The notes below the pieces were generated by a model, which was not told the DNA's origin, made no database searches, and saw only the letters and a program-made list of their open reading frames with translations. Below are positions 9,701 to 31,430 of a stretch of 64,000 bases of DNA, in pieces (within the stretch, counting starts at the first letter, position 1; each line of letters opens with the position of its first letter). Origin of the DNA: Macrostomum lignano (taxonomy: Eukaryota); assembly GCA_002269645.1 (NCBI GenBank), contig NIVC01000914.1, forward strand, positions 9,981-73,980, in the 5' to 3' direction. Both the position numbers and the translations under genes were made by a program.

Positions 9701-12700
9701 TCCATTCTTCCCGAATCCCAATTCTTCCCGAATCCCAATTCTTCCCGAATCCCAATTCTTCCCGAATCCCAATTCTTCCCGAATCCCAATTCTTCCCGAA
9801 TTTCGATTTTTCCCGAATCCCGATTCTTCCCAAATTTCCATTCTTCCCGAATCCCAATTCTTCCCGAATCCCAATTCTTCCCGAATCCCAGTTCTTCCCG
9901 AATCCCGATTCTTCCCGAATCCCGATTCTTCCCGAATCCCAATTCTTCCCGAATCCCAATTCTTGCCGAATCCCAGTTCTTCCAGAATCCTTCCTAAGTC
10001 TTCTGAAATCCCCAAAACTGTCATTACGATTGTTTTCAAGTCTGAGTTCACAGGACTTCTAAAAAGAGCTCCTGGATAGGTGGCGTCCCTTATCCAACCA
10101 GCATATCGGAACTCAACCCCATCCAATAAGTCGCAGTTGCAGATGCTGTTGTTGGCAACAAGCCAATGCTTTAATACAAGGCCGCTTCCAGTCCAGATGC
10201 TATTTTTAGAAGTCCACAATTGGAACAGATCCTTCGCCATTTTTCTATACTCGGAAGGCTACGCATTCCAATAAGGATTTATCAGCTTCTCAGATGGGCT
10301 TTTGGCCATAGACAAATGCTGAGTAATCAACAACGCCGAAGGCTGCTCACTGGCGGTGCACAGCGCCTTGTCCTCGTCGTAGCCGTCGATGCAGTCGGCC
10401 CGGCCGTCGCAGATGAAAGCGAACGAGAGGCACTGGCCGCTCTTGCAGGGCCACGGAGTCGAACGGGGACAGTCGTTGCCAACAACTCCGGGGCCGGCTG
10501 CGGGATCCGGTTGGGAGATTTATGGGAAAACTGGGATTTTTGAAGAACTGGGTTTTGGGAAGAATTCGGACTCGGGAAGGATTGGGATTTGGGAAGAATT
10601 GGGATTTAGAAAAAAGGGAATTAGAAATTGGGATTTAGGGAAAATCAGGACTTAGGGATAATCAAGATTTAGGGAGAATTGGGATTTAGGGAGAATCGGG
10701 ATTTAGGGAGAATCGGGATTTAGGGAGAATCGGGATTTAGGGAGAATCGGGATTTAGGGAGAATCGGGATTTAGGGAGAATCGGGATTTAGGGAGAATCG
10801 GGATTTAGGGAGAATCGGGATTTAACGAGAATCGGGATTTAGGGACATTCGGGATTTAGGGACAATTGGGATTTAGGGAGGGATTAGGATTTAGAGAGAA
10901 TCGGGATTTAGGGAGAATCGGGATTTAGGGAGAATCGGGATTTAGGGAGAATCGGGATATAGGGAGAATCGGGATTTAGGGAGGGATTAGGATTTAGAGA
11001 GAATCGGGATTTAGGGAGAATCGGGATGTAGGGAGAATCGGGATTTAGGGAGGGATTAGGATTTAGAGAGAATCGGGATTTAGGGAGAATCGGGATTTAG
11101 GGAGAATCGGGATTTAGGGAGAATCGGGATATAGGGAGAATCGGGATTTAGGGACATTCGGGATTTAGGGAAAATCGGGATTTAGGGAGGGATTAGGATT
11201 TAGAGAGAATCGAGATTTAGGGAGAATCGGGATTTAGGGAGGGATTAGGATTTAGAGAGAATCGGGATTTAGGGAGGGATTAGGATTTAGGGAGAATCGG
11301 GATTTAGGGAGAATCGGGATTTAGGGAGAATCGGGATTTAGGGAGAATCGGGATTTAGGGAGAATCGGGATTTAACGAGAATCGGGATTTAGGGACATTC
11401 GGGATTTAGGGACAATTGGGATTTAGGGAGAATCGGGATTTAGGGAGAATCGGGATTTAGGGAGAATCGGGATTTAGGGAGAATCGGGATTTAGGGAGAA
11501 TCGGGATTTAGGGAGAATCGGGATTTAGGGAGAATCGGGATTTAGGGAGAATCGGGATTTAACGAGAATCGGGATTTAGGGACATTCGGGATTTAGGGAC
11601 AATTGGGATTTAGGGAGGGATTAGGATTTAGAGAGAATCGGGATTTAGGGAGAATCGGGATTTAGGGAGAATCGGGATTTAGGGAGAATCGGGATATAGG
11701 GAGAATCGGGATTTAGGGAGGGATTAGGATTTAGAGAGAATCGGGATTTAGGGAGAATCGGGATGTAGGGAGAATCGGGATTTAGGGAGGGATTAGGATT
11801 TAGAGAGAATCGGGATTTAGGGAGAATCGGGATTTAGGGAGAATCGGGATTTAGGGAGAATCGGGATATAGGGAGAATCGGGATTTAGGGACATTCGGGA
11901 TTTAGGGAAAATCGGGATTTAGGGAGGGATTAGGATTTAGAGAGAATCGAGATTTAGGGAGAATCGGGATTTAGGGAGGGATTAGGATTTAGAGAGAATC
12001 GGGATTTAGGGAGGGATTAGGATTTAGGGAGAATCGGGATTTAGGGAGAATCGGGATTTAGGGAGAATCGGGATTTAGGGAGAATCGGGATTTAGGGAGA
12101 ATCGGGATTTAACGAGAATCGGGATTTAGGGACATTCGGGATTTAGGGACAATTGGGATTTAGGGAGGGATTAGGATTTAGAGAGAATCGGGATTTAGGG
12201 AGAATTGGGATGTAGGGAGAATCGGGATGTAGGGAGAATCGGGATTTAGGAAGAATTGGGATTTAGGGAGAATCGGGATTTTGGGACATACGGGATTTAG
12301 GGAGAATCTGGATTTAGGGAGAATCGGGATTTAGGAACAATCGGGATTTAGGGAGGGATCAGGGTTTTGGGAGAATCTGGATTTAGGGAGAATCTGGATT
12401 TAGGGAGAATCGGGATTTAGGAACAATCGGGATTTAGGGAGGGATCAGGATTTTGGGAGAATCGGGATTTAGGGAGAATCCGGGATGTAGGGAGAATCGG
12501 GATTTAGGGAGAATCGGGATTTAGGGAGGGATCAGGATTTAGGGAGGGATCAGGATTTTGGGAGAATCGGGATTTAGGGAGGGATCAGGATTTTGGGAGA
12601 ATCGGGATTTAGGGAGAATCGGGATTTAGGGAGAATCGGGATTTAGGGAGAATCGGGATGTAGGGAGAATCGGGATTTAGGGAGAATCGGGATGTAGGGA

Positions 12701-16750: not shown

Positions 16751-17110
16751 AGGCAATCTACATGACTCATGTAGACTTCGTCAATTCCAGAATAGAAAAC
16801 CTCTGCACAAGCCGGACGCTCGCACAAGATTTCCAGCTCTGCGGCCCCCCTCGCCCCAGATTAATTGTTTCTTTGCTAGCTGGAACAACAACAGCAGCAG
16901 CAGATTGAGCTGGCGGCAGCTGCTGGCTGGCTTAGTGGCGCAGAGAGGGAGAAGGGGGAGAGGGACACGTCAGCACAGTTAGAGCCTTTCCGACTTCTTT
17001 TCCCTAAATTCTAGGAATAAATTCACGAGATCCCCCTGTGGGTCATCGGAGAGTCGAAACATTTCTTTTGCTTTTGTTAGCGTGCAGCGACGAACCAGTT
17101 TGTCCCGGCC

Positions 17111-17326
17111 ATGCTGCTGCTGCTGCCGCTTCTGGCCGGCCTGCTATCACCGATAGGCCCGGCCGAGGCTAAACGGGTGCTGGACATCACGGAGAAGAAC
17201 TTGGCCAGCGTTGTGGGCACCAAGACTCTGGCGCTGGTGCTGTTCTACTCGCCCGGCTGCCAGCCCTGCGTGGAGGTGCTCTCCGTCATGCAGCGGTAAG
17301 GCTGCCTGTGCGCCTGTCAGCCTGAC

Positions 17327-17404: not shown

Positions 17405-17451
<47 letters not shown>

Positions 17452-21720: not shown

Positions 21721-22287
21721 TTGGACTGAGTGAAAATAGAGTGGCAGATGTCAATGGCAGACAGACGGTTTTATTAGTTAGTGATTAATGTTAGAAGTAA
21801 AAACATTTCGCCTTAAACGCAATTAGTAACAGGTGTGTTATTAATGCGTAAATAACGGCTTATAAACTGAAGTTTAACGCAATTTCTCAACCCTCACGTC
21901 ATCATAAAAAAATCGATGCACCCTACCCGCCCCATATCGCTTCCACTTAATACGCCAAATAAATATATAAGTCATAAAAACTGAATCAATCGATTCAATT
22001 CAAGAATAAACTTGCTAGGAGTTTAAAATTGTCCAAACAATTCCAATATAAGCAAATTCAAGTAAAAACTGCACCAAGGAATCATGCGCAACACTTGCTG
22101 CAGAGAAAAATTTATTGTATAATTTGAAATGTTGATTCTAACATTAAAAAATTGCTGAAGATGGGTGCTTAGTGGCTTTTGGAATGGGGAATATAGAAAT
22201 AGGGATTTGGGAGTTTAGATGCAGGGTTTCGACTAGACTTGGAAGCAGATTATGATTAGAAAGCTGCACTGCAAAGGAAGTAGCATA

Positions 22288-22967
22288 AGTCAGTCAGTCA
22301 GTCAGTCAGTCAGTCAGTCAGTCAGTCAGTCAGTCAGTCAGTCACCCATTCACTCAAGACAGTCAGTCAGTCAGTCAGTCAGTCAGTCAGTCAGTCAGTC
22401 AGTCAGTCAGTCAGTCAGTCACCCACTCAATCAAGTCAGTCAGTCAGTCAGTCAGTCAGTCAGTCAGTCAGTCAGTCAGTCAGTCAGTCAGTCAGTCAGT
22501 CAGTCAGTCAGTCAGTCAGTCAGTCAGTCAGTCAGTCAGTCAGTCAGTCAGTCAGTCAGTCAGTCAGTCAGTCAGTCAGTCAGTCAGTCAGTCAGTCAGT
22601 CAGTCAGTCAGTCAGTCAGTCAGTCAGTCAGTCAGTCAGTCAGTCAGTCAGTCAGTCAGTCAGTCAGTCAGTCAGTCAGTCAGTCAGTCAGTCAGTCAGT
22701 CAGTCAGTCAGTCAGTCAGTCAGTCAGTCAGTCAGTCAGTCAGTCAGTCAGTCAGTCAGTCAGTCAGTCAGTCAGTCAGTCAGTCAGTCAGTCAGTCAGT
22801 CAGTCAGTCAGTCAGTCAGTCAGTCAGTCAGTCAGTCAGTCAGTCAGTCAGTCAGTCAGTCAGTCAGTCAGTCAGTCAGTCAGTCAGTCAGTCAGTCAGT
22901 CAGTCAGTCAGTCAGTCAGTCAGTCAGTCAGTCAGTCAGTCAGTCAGTCAGTCAGTCAGTCAGTCAG
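22288..22967. repeat. (TCAG)n microsatellite, largely perfect, abutting the MVD stop
   Basis: Direct reading. Confidence 0.97.
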
Positions 22968-24560
22968 AATCAAACCAAGCGGCCGCCTCCGCCTGTGGAA
23001 TATCGAGCGCCCCCGGCCGAGCCGGCAGATCAGCAGCGATTCGATCCGGTGGCGCGCAGTCGCCCCCTCGCCGCCGCTGCCGTCGCCAGCCCAGTCTGAG
23101 GGAACCTTCGAATTGTCGGCCGCCTCGCCTAAGTCGCCGACCACCTGGCCGATGTCGAAGGCCCGCTGCAGACAACCAGCAGCCAGGTGTACATCGGCCG
23201 GCTGGGCCAGCAGGCAGACGTTCGGGCCGGCATCCGCTGTGTAGCCGAGAACGACTCGGCCGGAGGCTTCGTTCAGCCGGTGCACGAAGTCGATGATGGC
23301 GCGCGAAGCGTCGGTCAGGTAGTGCACGGGCGGGTAGGTGTCCGCGCACACCGCATGCAGGCAGTTGCTGTCCCGCATGGACATCTCGGCCAGGCTAGCG
23401 AAGTCGCGGCCGGCCACCGCCTCGCGCACCGCGGCCAGCCTGTCGGGCAGGCAGCTCAGCCTGGCCGGAAGCAGCGAGCTGGTGGCCACGGTCCGCGCCA
23501 TTGCCTGGGTGGACGGCGCCGATTTGGCGCCGGCGCCAACTACGCAGACGAGGACGCGCAGGTCCCAGTGGCCGGCCGAGGCCAGCTGGCTGGCGGTCGA
23601 GTCCACGCCGTCCGGACGCTGGCCGGCCGACCATTCGGCGAAGCCGGCGAACAGAGAGCGGCAGGCGGAGCCGGAGCCGAGCCGGGCCACCGTGCTGAGC
23701 CAGCGAAGGGTGTCGGCGCTGACGGTGCGGAGGAAGGGAATGGGTGTACAACTGGGGTGCTAGACTGACAAGATTACAACCATAACTGACAAGACTACAG
23801 CCACAGCTGACAAGATAACAATCACAGCTGACAAGATAACAATCACAGCTGACAAGATAACAGCCCTAGCTGACAAGATAACAGCCCCAGCAGACAAGAT
23901 AACAGCCCCAGCTGACAAGATAACAACCACAGCTGACAAAATAACAGCTCCAGCTGACAAGATAACAGCCCTAGCTGACAAGATAACAGCCCCAGCTGAC
24001 AAGATAACAGCCCCAGCTGACAAGATAACAACCACAGCTGACAAAATAACAGCCCCAGCTGACAAAATAACAGCCCTAGCTGACAAGATAACAGCCCCAG
24101 CTGACAAGATAACAGCCCCAGCTGACAGCTACACTCACTCGCAGCTGTCCGAACCGCCGTCGCCCACAATTCCGTACAGCCTGGCGACGGCAACCGCAAA
24201 GGCGCACAAACCCGAAGAGGAGCTGGCGAGGCCGGCAGCCGTGGGGAAGCTGTTCCTGGTGGCAACCCGCACCTTCCAGCTGGCCAAGTCCTGGCCCCGC
24301 TGGCAACGCTGACGCAGCGACTGCAGTACAGCGCGCATCCGGTCAGTAACCTCGACCGGTTTGCCGTTCAACTCAACAAAATCTTCGGCAAATTCTGGCG
24401 AAGCCGTTGCCATAGTAACCGTGCGCATCAGCTGGTCGTCAAGGGTAACGCTGATAGAGTTATTTAGCGGCAGCACCAGCCTGCTGTCTCGCTTGCCCCA
24501 GTATTTAATTAGCGCCAAGTTTGGCGCCGCCGCCGCGTAGGCAATAAAACTTTCGTCAGA
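22956..24560 (-). CDS. MVD: Diphosphomevalonate decarboxylase (394 codons without Met; initiator not found in the locus)
   Basis: Exons 24139-24560 and 22956-23718 (phase 2; 1185 nt). Motifs PNLALIKYWGKRD, LPLNNSISVTL, NSFPTAAGLASSSSG, ARLGSGSACRSLF, MRDSNCLHAVCADTYPP and YTADAGPN. Confidence 0.93.
23765..24128. repeat. 21-bp minisatellite GCTGACAAGATAACAGCCCCA filling the MVD intron
   Basis: Direct reading; the intron is 23719-24138. Confidence 0.95.
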
Positions 24561-24639
24561 CTGCAAAATGCACGTAAAATCAAACACTACTATGAGTAGC
24601 ACTGAATTTTACTATAAATAGCTTTGTAACTATAAAATG

Positions 24640-24935
24640 GAATCTATATAATTCCATCCTACTATAAGTAGCATCTCAACTGGAAAACTCGAATTCTATC
24701 TTACTATAAGTAGCATCTCGACTAGAAAACTCGAATTCTATCCTACCATAAGTAGCATCTCGACTGGAAAACTCGAATTCTATCCTACTATAAGTAGTAT
24801 CTCAACAGGAAAACTCGAATTTTATCCTACCATAAGTAGCATCTCGACTGGAAAACTCGAATTCTATCCTACTATAAGTAGCATCTCGACTGGAAAACTT
24901 TCATTCTATCCTACTATAAGTAGCATCTCAACTAC
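24640..24935. repeat. 42-bp minisatellite CTATAAGTAGCATCTCGACTGGAAAACTCGAATTCTATCCTA upstream of the MVD acceptor
   Basis: Direct reading; about 7 copies. Confidence 0.9.
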
Positions 24936-25895
24936 AAAACCCTAAACACTATTGCAAGCGGGCGTAAATCTAAAGCTAGAAGTTATTTGTAACTTTATAT
25001 AAGCTGTTGACTTGTACCATGGATTAATAAATCAAGGTGAATTAAAAGTAAGCAAACAAACAAGGATCACTTAGTTAATACATAAGAGTATGACAGACTT
25101 TCACCCGTAGGCTGTCACATTGCCAGTTACATAAGCGCCTTGTATATTTCGCTCAATTGGGAAGTGGACTTTAAGATAACTTCTGTCTAAGAGTGGAGAT
25201 TTGAGTGTAGCTGAGACAGGGGAGACACTGGGGCAGTTACCGGTAGTTAAATCCAAAAACCTGTGGTAATTAGACTGAGGGAGGCCAGGGGTTGGGGGCG
25301 CAAAAGCTTTAAAACAGTACTCGCGCATTAATCTGGTTGAATTTGCTACAGAAACACAGCTGGATACGGCACTGCTATTTGCGCACGGAATTATTAATCA
25401 AACGTATTTGTATTTAACAATAATAGATGCACACACATATATACTACTGCTATTCTTATCAGTAATCCGCTCAAATAAGTAGTACGTATAGCATGCATAA
25501 ATAAATGAATAAATAAATATTATGAAGACACACAAATTCTCACACTGATTACATAGACCCTGCATACAGGACAGACAGAGAGCAGTCTGGGGGGACCGAG
25601 ACCCAGCAACCCCGAAGCCCATTTGACCCCTAGAAAACGGCGCCTAGAATATATAACATAACAATGATAATAGTTAACAGTATTGTAGCACTGATAAATA
25701 GCAGGTACATTCTCCATCGAGGGGCGAAGAGGGGAGGGCAGGCGTTGGGGCGTCGGCTCCATTAATGCTAAGGAAACACCATCCGCAAAGTCTTTATTGT
25801 ATTATTATCATTAATTCTTATGATGAGCTGCAAAAACATATGATTAATAGTTGATAATAATAATAACAATAATCATTATTATCATTATCTATAGA

Positions 25896-28800
25896 TTAGC
25901 AGCATCCGCCACCGCCAGACTTGACCGGCTGAGTGCCCGGGTTGACTTTGATGGCCGGCCGAGTCTTTTGGTCGGCTGTCACAGGCCCCATTCGTGCCTT
26001 GATCTCCGAGGCCATGGACAAGAACGCCTGCTCCACGTTGGTGGCGTTCTTGGCGCTGGTCTCCAGGAATTGAATGCCCAGGGACTCGGCGTATTCCTGG
26101 TGGGTTGAGGGGTCAGGTGTGCAACTGGGTGTACAGTGGGGTCTGTGGGAGTGTGGCAGTGGGTGTACAGTGGGTCTATGGGGTGCGCAACTGGGTGTAC
26201 AGTGGGGTCTGTGTGGTGTGCGACTGGGTGTACAGTGGGTCTATGGGGTGCGCAACTGGGTGTACAGTGGGGTCTGTGGGGGTGTACAACTGGGTGTACA
26301 GTGGGGTCTGTGGGAGTGTGGCAGTGGGCGTACAGTGGGGTCTGTGGGGGTGTGAGTGTGGCAGTGTGTGAACTGTGAGGATGACTGGTTGTACAATCGG
26401 GTCGGTCTGTGGGTGTACATAAAGGGTTTCGAGAACAACCAGAGTACACTGGGATTCAAGGTTAACATCAACAGAAAGTAGCCTCACCTTGGCGGTGGCA
26501 AAGTCCACCACCTTGTTGGCCGTGAGGTCGCACTTGTTTCCCACTAGCAGGCGGTTGACGCTGTCGGAGGCGTAGCGCTCGATCTCCTGCAGCCAGTTCT
26601 TCACGTTGTTGAAAGAGTCCTGGTCGGTGACGTCATAGACTACGATGATGCCGTGGGCGCCGCGATAGTAGGATGAGGTGATGGTGCGGAACCGCTCCTG
26701 GCCGGCCGTGTCCCAGATCTAGAATGATGGTTGCGAAAGCAGAATTATATTTGTATGACCAGATTCTGTTGTGACTGCAATCTAGTCTGACCAGATACTG
26801 TTGTGACTGCAATCTAGTCTGACCAGATTCTGTTGTGACTGCAATCTAGTCTGACCAGATTCTGTTGTGACTGCAATCTAGTCTGACCAGATTCTGTTGT
26901 GACTGCAATCCAGTCTGACCAGATTCTGTTGTGACTGCAATCTAGTCTGACCAGATTCTGTTGTGACTGCAATCCAGTCTGACCAGATTCTGTTGTGACT
27001 GCAATCCAGCCTGATTAAAGATTATATTGTGACTGCAATCCAGTCTGACCAGATTATATTGTGACTGCAATCTAGTCTGGCTAGATTCTGTTGTGACTGC
27101 AATCCAGTCTGACCAGATTCTGTTGTGACTGCAATCTAGTCTGACCAGATTCTGTTGTGACTGCAATCCAGTCTGACCAGATTCTGTTGTGACTGCAATC
27201 CAGCCTGATTAAAGATTATATTGTGACTGCAATCCAGTCTGACCAGATTATATTGTGACTGCAATCTAGTCTGGCTAGATTCTGTTGTGACTGCAATCCA
27301 GTCTGACCAGATTCTGTTGTGACTGCAATCTAGTCTGACCAGATTCTGTTGTGACTGCAATCTAGTCTGACCAGATTCTGTTGTGACTGCAATCCAGCCT
27401 GATTAAAGATTATATTGTGACTGCAATCCAGTCTGACCAGATTCTGTTGTGACTGCAATCTAGTCTGACCAGATTCTGTTGTGACTGCAATCCAGTCTGA
27501 CCAGATTCTGTTGTGACTGCAATCCAGCCTGATTAAAGATTATATTGTGACTGCAATCCAGTCTGACCAGATTCTGTTGTGACTGCAATCTAGTCTGACC
27601 AGATTCTGTTGTGACTGCAATCCAGTCTGACCAGATTATATTGTGACTGCAATCTAGTCTGACCAGATTCTGTTGTGACTGCAATCCAGTCTGACCAGAT
27701 TCTGTTGTGACTGCAATCCAGCCTGATTAAAGATTATATTGTGACTGCAATCCAGTCTGACCAGATTATATTGTGACTGCAATCTAGTCTGACCAGATTC
27801 TGTTGTGACTGCAATCCAGTCTGACCAGATTCTGTTGTGACTGCAATCCAGCCTGATTAAAGATTATATTGTGACTGCAATCCAGTCTGACCAGATTCTG
27901 TTGTGACTGCAATCTAGTCTGACCAGATTCTGTTGTGACTGCAATCCAGTCTGACCAGATTATATTGTGACTGCAATCTAGTCTGACCAGATTCTGTTGT
28001 GACTGCAATCCAGTCTGACCAGATTCTGTTGTGACTGCAATCCAGCCTGATTAAAGATTATATTGTGACTGAAATCCAGTCTGACCAGATTATATTGTGA
28101 CTGCAATCTAGTCTGACCAGATTCTGTTGTGACTGCAATCCAGTCTGACCAGATTCTGTTGTGACTGCAATCCAGCCTGATTAAAGATTATATTGTGACT
28201 GCAATCCAGTCTGACCAGATTATATTGTGACTGCAATCCAGTCTGACCAGATTCTAATGTGACAAAGCTAATATTTGCAGTAAAAAATTGAAGTTCCTAA
28301 AAATTGAAAAAAAAACATAAATAACCTGCAGCTTGATAGTTTTGCCATCCAGTTCAATAGTTCGAATCTTGAAATCCACGCCAATGGTACTGATGTAGCT
28401 GTCTGTGTAAGTGTCATCAGCAAAGCGCAGCAGAAGGCAGCTTTTACCAACACCCGAGTCGCCAATAAGCAACAGCTTGAACAGGTAGTCGCTGATAGGT
28501 TTGGGCAAGGAAGTGAAGGAAAGTAAGTATTACATTACAGTTTGATTTTTTATCCAAAAAGTACAAATATACTGTAATATACTATTAATAATTGCTTCAA
28601 AACTGTCTTTAAGAATTTAGATTTTTTGTAAAATATGCTAACAAAAATTCTCAAAAGTCTAGATTAGCATGTCATATTAGTAATTAGATACAATGGTATA
28701 ATATATCATACTATAACATCTGCATAATATGCCATATTGCAATAATAATCTTATATAACATAAAGCAGGTAAATTAAGCAGCTTTAAACACTTTAAATGT

Positions 28801-31059
28801 TTGAACAATCCACTGCACTGTTTCACTTGCTATCATTCTAACCCACTCTCTTGTTGCATCATTATGTATCTTCTTGCCCTATGAATTTTATACAGTAATA
28901 TGTATATAAAATTAATAATTTATTTATTTATTTATTCCATTTGCCCCAATGTGCAATGGGCAAATGTGCAAAGATCAGCTCAGCTATAGTCTACTGCATG
29001 GTGCATCTGAAGGCTGCATATGGCTGTTTAGTCCAATGACTAAGGGGTTGCCATGCATACTTTCAATTATCCCAACTAATGCAAGCATCCATTTTACAGC
29101 TGGGTGAACTAAAGCAATGCAGAATTATGTTTTGTTTAAGGATTCAAATAAGATTGGGAATCAAACCCAAAACCTTTTAATCATAAGTCCAATGCTCTAA
29201 CCACTAGGCTATAACCCCCGTAATATATATATGCCTTGACTAACTACCTCTAATGCCCAAGGTGCATGCATATCATCATGGGTTTTTTATACGTTGCTCC
29301 CCTTAATCATAGAGAGCATCATTGCAGGGGTAGATCCAGAAGAGGGGCCAAGGGAGCCATGGCCCCCCTTAGCTGCGGCCAAAGAAATTTTGATCATATT
29401 TTTTTGGCCTACTACTATGCCAAATCTTTTTTATTTTAATTTCCTTTAATTCTAATTTAGTTTATTGGCAAAATAAAATATTTGATTGCTTTGGGACCTA
29501 CCTTGCTATGTTTATTGTTTATACCCCTACTTTGCTCATGTCTACCTCTGTTTTAGACATTGAAATAAATAATAAATAAAGTAATTTAATTTATACAAGT
29601 TTAGAAAAATACTTAAGCATATTATATTTCTAATATAATACATGCTATTAATATTTAACAATATATTTTATATTATATTTTATATATTTTATATATTATA
29701 TTTTATAAAATATATTTTATATTTTATATTATATATAAATAAAATATAAAACTATATCTATATATATAATAGTCTAGCCTATAATAGAAAGAGAAGTTTA
29801 AAATTCTTAAAATCTTTTTGTTTGTCTATTTTATTTATTTAATTAGGCTTATAGCCTAATTTTTTAATATTGATCATTTTAAACAATTAGCTAATCTTTA
29901 AATTAAAAAGAAATCTTTATTTTGTAGTAGTTACCTACTACATAATAATTTGTCAAGTTATTAACTTAACTGTATATTATTTCAAATGGTTTAAAGATAT
30001 TATTTTTTTCTAATGGGAACATTATAATATAAAATTAAAAAATAACCAGTAAAACTAAGAAAGTTAACTCAGTGACAACCCATGTCATGTTAACCATTAG
30101 GTCTAGCCATTGCAATTTGAATATCACAAAAGATACAAATATACAATGGCAGTGCTTATCCCCTCGGTACCGTAGGAATAATTTCTGTCTTATTCCAATG
30201 ATACCGTGCGAATAATTTTCTGCTTATCTGCACGGCACACTGACGAGATAGCTGCCCTATCTTCTACATATGCCGTGTGGGAAGTTTAGTACATACGATT
30301 TGAGTGCAGTATAACAACTTTGTTGAATTATTGTTGAATAAGTATACAGAAGGGTATCAGTAAAGCAGAATAACACGCATTTACACATGCATATACTAGT
30401 CTAGAACTGATTCAAGTTTATACATCATCAAGATCAACAGCTTCTTAGTATCCTCAGTTCAAATTCCCTTTCAATAAGCTATAAACTATTCACGCACAGC
30501 ATATATATGTAGCAGATAAAAACCGATAGGGCAGCTAGTAAAGCAGAGGGAATAAAACAGAGGACGTGTAGGGCAGCTATCTCGTCAGTGTGCCGTGCGG
30601 ATAAGCAGAAAATTATTCCCACGGCATATGTAGAAGATAGGGCAGCTATCTCGTCAGTGTGCCATGCGGATAAGCAGAAAATTATTCGCACGGTACCGTT
30701 GGAATAAGACAGAAATTATTCCTACGGTACTGTGGGGATAAGCACTGCCATATTATCATATACAATACTGTCAACACAGATGCTTAAAATACATACATTC
30801 ATTATCCTTTATGACACCAAAGCAAGATAGGTAAGCTAAGTTTAATTTTATTTAATATGCAGCATTATCACTTTATATCTTAGCTATATCTTATATTATA
30901 TATCTGATTTTATATCTTATATCTATACTACTTTAGGTCTAGACTACTATAGATACAAACAAAGTAAAAAAGCATGAGTGTATAACCCAATGAGATAACA
31001 GGAAAGCTACTAAATGAGCAAGGAATAATTCAAATCGTTACTTACTATTCTGGAGTCAT
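25896..31059 (-). CDS. RAB1: Ras-related protein Rab-1 (203 aa)
   Basis: Exons 31046-31059 (ATG ACT CCA GAA TA|gtaagt), 28326-28491, 26488-26718 and 25896-26096; 612 nt. [22 protein letters not shown]...WDTAGQE...NKCD...ETSAK...GGGGCC*. Confidence 0.97.
26120..26375. repeat. Degenerate GGGTGTACAGTGGG-containing minisatellite in Rab1 intron 3
   Basis: Direct reading. Confidence 0.85.
26755..28255. repeat. 32-bp minisatellite GATTCTGTTGTGACTGCAATC(T/C)AGTCTGACCA with higher-order variants, filling Rab1 intron 2
   Basis: Direct reading; near-identical ORF-track hits spaced 194 and 324 bp show higher-order periodicity. Confidence 0.96.
28915..29214 (-). mobile_element. Old tRNA-headed CORE-type SINE copy in Rab1 intron 1, with 3' hairpin and (AATA)n tail
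   Basis: The reverse complement aligns by eye to the SINE at 46302 (tagcctagtggttagagc... gttcacccagctgtaaaatgg... cagccttcagatgc). Confidence 0.8.
30147..30750. mobile_element. MITE-like element with long (about 140 bp) terminal inverted repeats TGGCAGTGCTTATCCCC...GGGGATAAGCACTGCCA
   Basis: 30147-30287 is the near reverse complement of about 30620-30750; part of the right arm is internally duplicated; no clean TSD. Confidence 0.75.
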
Positions 31060-31430
31060 CTATATGAGTACGGAAATTTAGTTACTAAGTTACAAATACA
31101 AAATATTACACAACAATTTCGATAAGTAAGCTCAAGTAAAAGGTGGTTCCACTTTCAAGGAATCAACATTTAAATCCTAGACAACGCTCGTTGTTTAAAG
31201 TAAAACAAAGTGAAAAACATCTGCAACAATTTTAGGTAAAAATTACCAGTAAACTTACTTTTTCTATTTTAAAATAAAACATTTTTTTAGTTTGAAAATA
31301 ACATAGCAAAAAAATGTTTCGTCTCTCTAGTAACACATAGAACCATGTTCATTTTAAATTACTTATTATAAAACACTATAAGAGGAATCCAAATAGTGAG
31401 TGATTAATACGCACCAAAACTGTCAACATA
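31060..31430. promoter_or_regulatory. Putative bidirectional promoter between the Rab1 and AK7 start codons, with an RFX X-box-like site GTCTCTCTAGTAAC at 31321-31334
   Basis: The ATGs are divergent and about 370 bp apart. The site fits GTHNYY-NN-RRNAAC about 100 bp upstream of a motile-cilia gene. Confidence 0.6.

What the first reader, a model, noticed from the sequence alone, without database searches (positions are those of the whole stretch)
24139..25900. MVD has no genomic start codon: probable spliced-leader-donated AUG and a Rab1-MVD operon
Seen: the MVD frame begins right after a strong acceptor (tgcattttgcag|TCT GAC GAA, 24560) in phase 0. There is no in-frame ATG before the conserved NLALIKYWGK, and adding one Met gives MSDESFIAY..., 395 aa, a normal full-length MVD. 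Rab1 ends about 1.3 kb upstream on the same strand, with AATAAA about 100 nt after its stop. Established: flatworm spliced leaders end in AUG, which can act as the initiator, and trans-splicing resolves polycistronic transcripts. Inference: an essential mevalonate-pathway enzyme depends on SL trans-splicing and may be the downstream cistron of Rab1.
Basis: partly seen in the sequence, partly recalled or inferred. Interest (0 to 1): 0.75.

Follow-up and report, generated by a model that had tools for sequence, protein, structure and literature searches.

The report
Flatworm MVD gene borrows its start codon
In the flatworm Macrostomum lignano, the gene for the mevalonate-pathway enzyme MVD has no start codon of its own and almost certainly gets its AUG from the trans-spliced leader, a mechanism already known in flatworms; the proposed Rab1-MVD operon remains unproven.

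Summary
The window is Macrostomum lignano contig NIVC01000914.1, and the genes in question lie on the minus strand. MVD (BOX15_Mlig028088g3, annotated 'partial') opens at ttttgcag|TCT (24560) and runs 394 codons with no genomic ATG before the conserved KYWGK motif. The published 35-nt M. lignano spliced leader (SL) ends in ATG and contains no other ATG. Joined in silico at 24560, it gives a 395-aa MSDESF... protein. Its N-terminus length equals the median of 105 MVD homologues. The acceptor matches the published trans-splice motif. Gene models from two assemblies start at exactly this nucleotide without a Met. I could not reach any reads containing the SL-exon junction, so the support is strong but indirect. 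SL-donated initiator AUGs are established in Schistosoma (Cheng 2006) and have been noted for Macrostomum, so this is a new example of a known kind. The operon claim is borderline. The only AATAAA lies 98 nt after the Rab1 stop, leaving about 1.2 kb to the acceptor, or about 920 nt after subtracting repeats. The published cut-off is 1 kb and the mode is about 100 nt. One unexpected result: a sister haplotype (g1) carries ATG exactly where the window has the acceptor CAG. This is either a real allele with the start codon encoded in the genome, or an artefact of polishing the assembly with RNA-seq reads.

The parts
25896..26096 (-). Last exon of Rab1 (BOX15_Mlig021247g3), ending in stop codon TAA at 25898-25896. 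The other Rab1 exons are 31059-31046, 28491-28326 and 26718-26488.
   Evidence: The spliced CDS gives 203 aa. This exact protein is in the collection as PAA74913.1, Ras-related protein Rab-1A.
25793..25798 (-). AATAAA poly(A) signal of Rab1, 98 nt after the stop. It is the only AATAAA or ATTAAA in the spacer.
24561..25895 (-). Rab1-MVD spacer of 1335 nt. It is either the MVD outron or an intercistronic region. It is AT-rich, has no Rfam hit and no other copy in the window, and carries 10 ATGs in its last 400 nt.
24993..25001 (-). TATATAAAG. This could be a TATA box for an MVD promoter, or a variant distal poly(A) signal of Rab1. It is not significant on its own.
   Evidence: One match in the window, with 0.48 expected by chance.
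24650..24940 (-). Tandem repeat of 42-nt units, 6.9 copies, inside the spacer. It is about 330 nt longer in haplotype g1.
24561..24575 (-). 3' splice site region. It holds a candidate branch A at 24575 (-15), a pyrimidine-rich tract and the acceptor TTGCAG. Haplotype g1 differs at 24575 (A>C) and at 24563-24562 (CA>AT), which turns CAG into ATG.
   Evidence: The motif [T/C]TNCAG is from PMC8629364.
24139..24560 (-). MVD exon 1 (422 nt). It is open from its first base and has no ATG before codon 45.
23719..24138 (-). MVD intron (GTGAGT...CAG), mostly a 21-nt tandem repeat (23765-24127).
22956..23718 (-). MVD exon 2, coding part, with stop TGA at 22958-22956. The G5 run at 23014-23010 is one G shorter than in g1 and g2, which shifts the frame of the last 19 codons.
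22111..22967 (-). MVD 3' UTR. It consists of a (CTGA)n microsatellite at 22288-22967, which contains the stop codon, followed by AATAAA at 22116-22111.

Best explanation
The MVD pre-mRNA of M. lignano is trans-spliced at the acceptor ttttgcag|TCT (window 24560, minus strand). The 35-nt spliced leader CGGTCTCTTACTGCGAAGACTCAATTTATTGCATG replaces the AT-rich, AUG-laden outron. The leader's 3'-terminal AUG then lies in phase 0 directly before the Ser codon and serves as the initiator, giving a 395-aa diphosphomevalonate decarboxylase that begins MSDESFIAY. Shown here: the gene structure, the lack of a genomic ATG, the fit of the acceptor motif, the in-silico ORF, the normal N-terminus length, and gene models that start at this exact base. 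Taken from the literature: the SL sequence, and the fact that flatworm SL AUGs can initiate translation. Inferred: that SL is really joined at this site and that the SL AUG is the one used. Where the primary transcript starts is unresolved. I put an own promoter in the 1.2-kb spacer at about 0.6 and read-through from Rab1 (an operon) at about 0.35.
For: P0001 is 100% identical to the window protein and is named BOX15_Mlig028088g3, partial, M. lignano. The locus is NIVC01000914.1. The SL sequence ends in ATG, and 30-39% of M. lignano genes are trans-spliced. TTGCAG fits [T/C]TNCAG, the top motif at trans-splice acceptors. SL plus exon 1 makes the SL AUG the first AUG, opening 395 codons. The next AUG is at codon 46 and would remove the conserved PNLALIKYWGK segment. 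The distance from the N-terminus to the KYWGK motif is 19 residues, equal to the median (IQR 16-21) of 105 Met-started homologues. The g1 model in Mlig_3_7 and four WormBase/ML2 models all begin at SDESF without a Met. The Mlig_3_7 pipeline cuts 5' ends at trans-splice peaks after trimming the SL. The last 400 nt of the outron carry 10 ATGs, so an unspliced leader would translate poorly. Pfam finds MVD-like_N, GHMP_kinases_N and MDD_C domains, and identity to animal MVDs is 44-46%. [quoted passage not shown] The Macrostomum SL ATG has been noted as a start codon. Haplotype g1 has ATG at exactly -3..-1, which independently points to Met-Ser-Asp as the N-terminus.
Against: No read or cDNA containing the SL-exon junction could be inspected. 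No MSDESF... protein exists in the 15-billion-protein collection. The g2 and g3 models start 24 nt inside the exon, not at the acceptor. The supplement tables held for the genome papers do not list this gene. The context of the SL AUG (U at -3, U at +4) is not a strong Kozak context; I read this from the sequence and did not test it. Flatworm acceptors are often shared between cis- and trans-splicing.
Confidence: 0.8

Rival explanations
1. Rab1 and MVD form an SL-resolved operon. One promoter upstream of Rab1 drives a polycistronic precursor, Rab1 is polyadenylated, and MVD is released by trans-splicing. This is compatible with the SL-AUG explanation; it competes only with the own-promoter reading.
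For: The two genes are adjacent on the same strand with no gene between them in all three haplotypes. The repeat-adjusted distance from the inferred Rab1 poly(A) site to the acceptor is about 920 nt, below the 1-kb rule of PMC8629364. About 40% of trans-spliced M. lignano genes are assigned to operons by that rule. If TATAAA near 24997 is a distal Rab1 poly(A) signal, the repeat-adjusted gap falls to about 120 nt, close to the published mode.
Against: The distance lies at the edge of the cut-off, far from the ~100-nt mode, and three times the 300-nt criterion used for other flatworms. The spacer is large enough for a promoter and contains a TATA-like element. The spacer is no more conserved between haplotypes than the coding sequence, so there is no sign of special constraint. 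No precursor RNA evidence was available.
Confidence: 0.35
2. A cis-spliced upstream exon in the spacer supplies the ATG, either alone or with extra N-terminal residues, and splices to the same acceptor.
For: 41 ATG...|GT combinations in phase exist in the spacer. Two have a GT[AG]AG donor: ATG 25762 to 25544|GTGAGA (73 codons) and ATG 24716 to 24705|GTAAGA (4 codons). Flatworm acceptors are often shared by cis- and trans-splicing.
Against: The GTAAGA donor lies in one tandem-repeat unit and is specific to g3. The 73-codon extension has no counterpart in 105 homologues, whose N-termini are 15-47 residues (median 19) before KYWGK. GTACAA does not fit the donor motif seen at 65% of M. lignano introns. 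No gene model in either assembly carries such an exon.
Confidence: 0.07
3. The real genomic state is ATG, as in haplotype g1, and MVD is a conventional gene. On this reading the CAG in the window is an error, or a dead allele.
For: g1 has ttttgATG|TCT and an intact 391-codon frame.
Against: Two separately assembled contigs (g2 and g3) both have CAG. Upstream of the g1 ATG lies an even longer ATG-rich repeat, and no model includes the Met. Mlig_3_7 was polished with RNA-seq reads, which could have written SL bases into g1.
Confidence: 0.04

Closest known systems
Flatworm mRNAs whose initiator methionine is the 3'-terminal AUG of the spliced leader (Cheng, Cohen, Ndegwa & Davis 2006, J Biol Chem 281:733, Schistosoma mansoni)
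   Same: The SL ends in AUG. The acceptor places that AUG in frame directly before an ORF that has no genomic start. The encoded protein is a conserved housekeeping enzyme of normal length.
   Different: The species is different: a free-living macrostomorph. No SL-junction cDNA or translation assay has been examined for this gene. No catalogue of such genes for M. lignano was found in the searchable literature.
[quoted passage not shown]
   Same: The acceptor motif TTNCAG, the conserved-gene class, a same-strand neighbour, and a repeat-inflated spacer.
   Different: The repeat-adjusted spacer of about 920 nt is at the cut-off rather than at the ~100-nt mode, so membership of the operon class is uncertain.
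Diphosphomevalonate decarboxylase (MVD/ERG19, GHMP kinase superfamily)
   Same: Pfam finds PF22700, PF00288 and PF18376. Identity to insect and vertebrate MVDs is 44-46% over about 82% of the length. The xPxNIAxIKYWGK and GSGSACRS motifs are present.
   Different: The last 19 residues of the window copy are frameshifted relative to the g1 and g2 copies (G5 versus G6). The stop codon lies inside a (CTGA)n microsatellite.

Membership tests
SL-AUG-initiated trans-spliced mRNA (flatworm type) | The organism's spliced leader ends in AUG | tested here: met
   The organism was identified as M. lignano. The published SL ...TTATTGCATG comes from PMC8629364. The SL has a single ATG, at nt 33-35. The SL gene itself is not in the window.
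SL-AUG-initiated trans-spliced mRNA (flatworm type) | The first coding exon begins at a 3' splice acceptor of trans-splice type | tested here: met
   ttttgcag|TCT fits [T/C]TNCAG. The 20 nt before the AG are 65% pyrimidine, and GC content steps from 29% to 54% at the boundary.
SL-AUG-initiated trans-spliced mRNA (flatworm type) | The ORF is open in phase with the SL AUG and has no genomic in-frame AUG before essential conserved residues | tested here: met
   The next AUG is at codon 46, beyond PNLALIKYWGK.
SL-AUG-initiated trans-spliced mRNA (flatworm type) | Adding only Met gives a full-length protein | tested here: met
   There are 19 residues before KYWGK, which equals the median of 105 homologues.
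SL-AUG-initiated trans-spliced mRNA (flatworm type) | cDNA or reads with the SL joined to this exon | not testable with these tools
   There was no access to read archives. Indirect evidence: five gene models begin at this exact base without a Met. No MSDESF... entry exists in the protein collection.
SL-AUG-initiated trans-spliced mRNA (flatworm type) | Translation starts at the SL AUG | not testable with these tools
   This needs Ribo-seq, N-terminal proteomics or a reporter assay.
SL-resolved operon (Rab1-MVD) | Same-strand adjacent genes with no intervening gene | tested here: met
SL-resolved operon (Rab1-MVD) | Short intercistronic distance (M. lignano rule: under 1 kb after subtracting repeats, mode ~100 nt; parasitic-flatworm rule: 300 nt or less) | tested here: inconclusive
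   The distance from the inferred poly(A) site is about 1215 nt raw and about 920 nt after subtracting the 291-nt repeat. This passes the 1-kb rule narrowly and fails the 300-nt rule.
SL-resolved operon (Rab1-MVD) | A polycistronic precursor and no internal promoter | not testable with these tools
   This needs RNA-seq, RAMPAGE or RT-PCR.
Diphosphomevalonate decarboxylase | Domain architecture and homology | tested here: met
   PF22700, PF00288 and PF18376 are found. E-values to annotated MVDs are 1e-79 to 1e-72.

The most novel reading that the evidence does not exclude
The CAG/ATG difference between haplotypes is real. If so, within one M. lignano genome the same MVD gene exists as an allele that depends on the SL-donated AUG (CAG acceptor, g2 and g3) and as an allele in which the acceptor, and a candidate branch A at -15, have been replaced by a genome-encoded ATG at the identical position (g1). 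That would be a direct snapshot of how dependence on the SL AUG is gained or lost. The intermediate AAG would keep every step functional.
Probability: 0.4. Interest if true: 0.55.

Novelty: new member of a known kind. Interest (0 to 1): 0.3.

Why it matters
The finding explains why all three MVD copies are deposited as 'partial' proteins. The SL, including its ATG, was trimmed before annotation. Genes that rely on the SL AUG will therefore be systematically mis-annotated as 5'-truncated in this and probably other flatworm genomes. It adds a conserved metabolic enzyme to the small set of documented SL-AUG-dependent genes. It does so in a free-living model flatworm where transgenesis makes the mechanism testable. 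It also matters practically: an MVD transgene or rescue construct built from genomic sequence alone would lack a start codon. The CAG/ATG haplotype difference is either a warning about polishing assemblies with RNA-seq in trans-splicing organisms, or a rare view of start-codon turnover.

Tried and rejected
- Transcript-derived proteins: I looked up MSDESF... and SL-frame-extended variants of all three copies by exact sequence in the 15-billion-protein collection. None is present.
- ML2 locus: I tried to fetch the contig encoding P0002. It is not on record.
- Supplements: I searched the supplements of Wudarski 2017 and Grudniewska 2018 for Mlig028088, MVD and diphosphomevalonate. There were no occurrences.
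- Primary papers: Cheng 2006 and Rajkovic 1990 are not held, so Cheng 2006 is cited only through papers that summarise it.
- SL gene: I searched the window for it, allowing up to 2 mismatches. It is absent.
- Spacer content: I looked for an RNA gene or a repeated element in the spacer. Rfam and self-BLAST found nothing except the spacer's own tandem repeat.
- Wider annotation: I tried to extend the annotated-gene survey to the rest of the window with two long ORFs. Neither is on record.
- Constraint on the spacer: rejected. Its divergence between haplotypes (about 0.4% per haplotype upstream of the repeat) is no lower than that of the CDS.
- Bacterial promoter/terminator scan: judged irrelevant for a metazoan locus and not run.
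Full report
**Identity of the locus.** A protein search with the spliced ORF returned a 100%-identical entry, 'hypothetical protein BOX15_Mlig028088g3, partial [Macrostomum lignano]'. The next hits were MVDs from insects, fungi and vertebrates at 44-46% identity, carrying Pfam PF22700, PF00288 and PF18376. The encoding contig is NIVC01000914.1 of assembly GCA_002269645.1 (Mlig_3_7). Locus L003 is an exact reverse-complement piece of the window. All genes discussed here are on the minus strand.

**Checking the observation.**
- The acceptor tgcattttgcag ends at 24561, and the exon starts with TCT at 24560.
- Exon 1 (24560-24139, donor GTGAGT) and exon 2 (23718-22956) give 394 codons with no ATG until codon 45. 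Upstream in frame there are 16 ATG-free codons and then two stops.
- Rab1 was rebuilt from four exons: 31059-31046, 28491-28326, 26718-26488 and 26096-25896. The exact 203-aa product is deposited as Rab-1A, BOX15_Mlig021247g1-3.
- The spacer from the Rab1 stop to the MVD acceptor is 1335 nt. Its only AATAAA or ATTAAA is 98 nt after the stop.
- Every factual element of the finding is therefore correct.

**Evidence that the AUG comes from the spliced leader.**
- M. lignano uses one 35-nt SL, CGGTCTCTTACTGCGAAGACTCAATTTATTGCATG. Between 30% and 39% of its genes are trans-spliced. The top motif at trans-splice acceptors is [T/C]TNCAG (PMC8629364 and PMC5730564). The MVD acceptor, TTGCAG, fits that motif.
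- The SL has a single ATG, at its 3' end. Joining the SL to exon 1 in silico makes that the first AUG of the mRNA, in phase with a 395-codon ORF beginning MSDESFIAY. The next AUG, at codon 46, would delete the conserved PNLALIKYWGK segment.
- With one Met added, the N-terminus lies 19 residues before KYWGK. That is exactly the median (IQR 16-21) of 105 Met-started homologues, so no upstream coding exon is missing.
- The last 400 nt of the outron contain 10 ATGs and are 29% GC, against 54% in the first 100 nt of the exon.
- The g1 model of Mlig_3_7 and four WormBase/ML2 models start at precisely this Ser codon without a Met. The Mlig_3_7 pipeline defines 5' ends from SL-containing reads after trimming the SL. 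This explains the 'partial' label.
- I could not reach any read archive, and no Met-bearing version is in the protein collection. The junction itself therefore remains inferred.

**Rival: an upstream cis-spliced exon.** Of 41 in-phase ATG...|GT combinations in the spacer, only two have a consensus GT[AG]AG donor.
- One adds 73 residues (ATG at 25762 to the donor at 25544), which is unlike any homologue.
- The other (donor at 24705) lies in a single tandem-repeat unit and is specific to this haplotype.
- I give this rival about 0.07.

**The operon claim.** Rab1 and MVD are adjacent on the same strand in all three assembled haplotypes. They are flanked by an adenylate-kinase/Dpy-30 gene and a thioredoxin-domain gene on the other strand.
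- From the inferred Rab1 cleavage site (about 25775) to the acceptor is about 1215 nt. Subtracting the 291-nt, 42-mer tandem repeat at 24650-24940 leaves about 920 nt.
- The published M. lignano rule counts pairs under 1 kb after repeat subtraction as operons. The real mode is about 100 nt, and 1 kb is the valley between the two modes. The rule used for parasitic flatworms is 300 nt or less. This pair therefore sits on the boundary.
- The spacer has no Rfam hit and no other copy in the window.
- It contains one TATATAAAG (25001-24993). That could be a TATA box or a variant distal poly(A) signal, and it is not statistically significant.
- Divergence of the spacer between haplotypes is no lower than that of the CDS.
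- I rate the operon at about 0.35 and treat it as unresolved.

**An unexpected result in the sister haplotype.** The three copies (g1 = L001, g2 = L002, g3 = window) are mosaic haplotypes about 1-2% apart.
- Downstream of the tandem repeat, g2 and g3 are identical, and all 8 differences in 524 nt are specific to g1. Three of these fall at -15, -3 and -2 of the acceptor. The chance of at least 3 of 8 differences falling in that 15-nt stretch is 0.0012.
- The effect is that g1 reads ttttgATG|TCTGAC where the window reads ttttgCAG|TCTGAC. The candidate branch A (ttttAcg) is a C in g1.
- Adjacent double substitutions are common in these haplotypes: 26 pairs in 17,735 aligned columns. One landing on exactly these two bases and producing ATG is still unlikely by chance, roughly 1e-4.
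- One non-random explanation is an artefact. Mlig_3_7 was polished with Pilon using RNA-seq reads mapped by STAR, so SL-bearing reads may have overwritten the bases next to the junction. The same group reports a full SL sequence sitting at the 5' end of another protein-coding gene in the assembly.
- The other explanation is a real allele in which the start codon is encoded in the genome and the splice signals are lost. The -15 change is not an SL base, which favours this reading slightly.
- Either way, the result points to an mRNA or protein that begins AUG-UCU-GAC, which supports the main claim.

**Comparison with what is known.** SL-donated initiator AUGs are established in flatworms. In S. 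mansoni the SL AUG is in frame in 28% of trans-spliced mRNAs, and more than 40 cDNAs need it (Cheng et al. 2006, as summarised in PMC9851317; also cited). For Macrostomum, Wiberg et al. [quoted passage not shown] No paper in the searchable library catalogues SL-AUG-dependent genes in M. lignano or mentions MVD. This is therefore a new member of a known kind, not a new mechanism.

**Verdict.** The SL-AUG interpretation is supported at about 0.8. The operon is not established. Interest is modest (0.3). The main value lies in annotation, where 'partial' proteins may flag SL-AUG genes, and in the CAG/ATG haplotype difference, which is worth a simple k-mer check in DNA reads.

Noticed in passing
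window 24575 and 24563-24562; L001 9986 and 9998-9999: Haplotype g1 has a genomic ATG exactly where the window has the acceptor CAG, and a C where the window has the candidate branch A. This is either a real start codon encoded in the genome or an artefact of polishing the assembly with RNA-seq (Pilon).
   Followed up: partly
window 23010-23014: The window copy has a G5 run where g1 and g2 have G6. This shifts the frame of the last 19 MVD codons (GRGRSIFHRRRRPLGLILTD versus GRGALDIPQAEAAAWFDSD). It is probably a homopolymer error from long-read assembly.
   Followed up: partly
window 22288-22967: A (CTGA)n microsatellite of about 680 nt (170 copies) contains the MVD stop codon and makes up most of the 3' UTR. 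The AATAAA follows at 22116.
   Followed up: partly
window 31046-31066: The Rab1 ATG sits directly after an acceptor-like tcatatag| in all three haplotypes, and its first exon is only 14 nt. If Rab1 is trans-spliced there, the SL AUG and the genomic AUG would be tandem and in frame (MMTPEY...).
   Followed up: no
window 28326 and 26488 (Rab1 donors of exons 2 and 3): Both Rab1 donors are phase 0. Read-through cis-splicing to the MVD acceptor would therefore give in-frame Rab1-MVD chimeras. This is relevant because flatworm acceptors are often shared between cis- and trans-splicing.
   Followed up: no
window 29153-29212 (-): There is a tRNA-like Rfam hit (34.6 bits, model positions 7-64 of 71) inside Rab1 intron 1. 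ARAGORN does not call it. It is possibly a tRNA-derived repeat or a pseudogene.
   Followed up: partly
L001, L002 and L003 over their whole length (window 12956-34536): The three assembled copies are mosaics. In L003 0-6 kb, g3 is the odd one out; in 6-11 kb, g1 is. This indicates recombination or gene conversion between haplotypes of the duplicated chromosome. Introns and spacers are full of tandem repeats whose copy number differs between haplotypes.
   Followed up: partly
window 17087-17111 (L003 about 17426-17450): The thioredoxin-domain (PDI-like) gene has an acceptor-like gtgcag| 23 nt before its ATG. g1 shows an adjacent double substitution immediately after that acceptor. An SL AUG joined there would be out of frame with the main ORF.
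   Followed up: no
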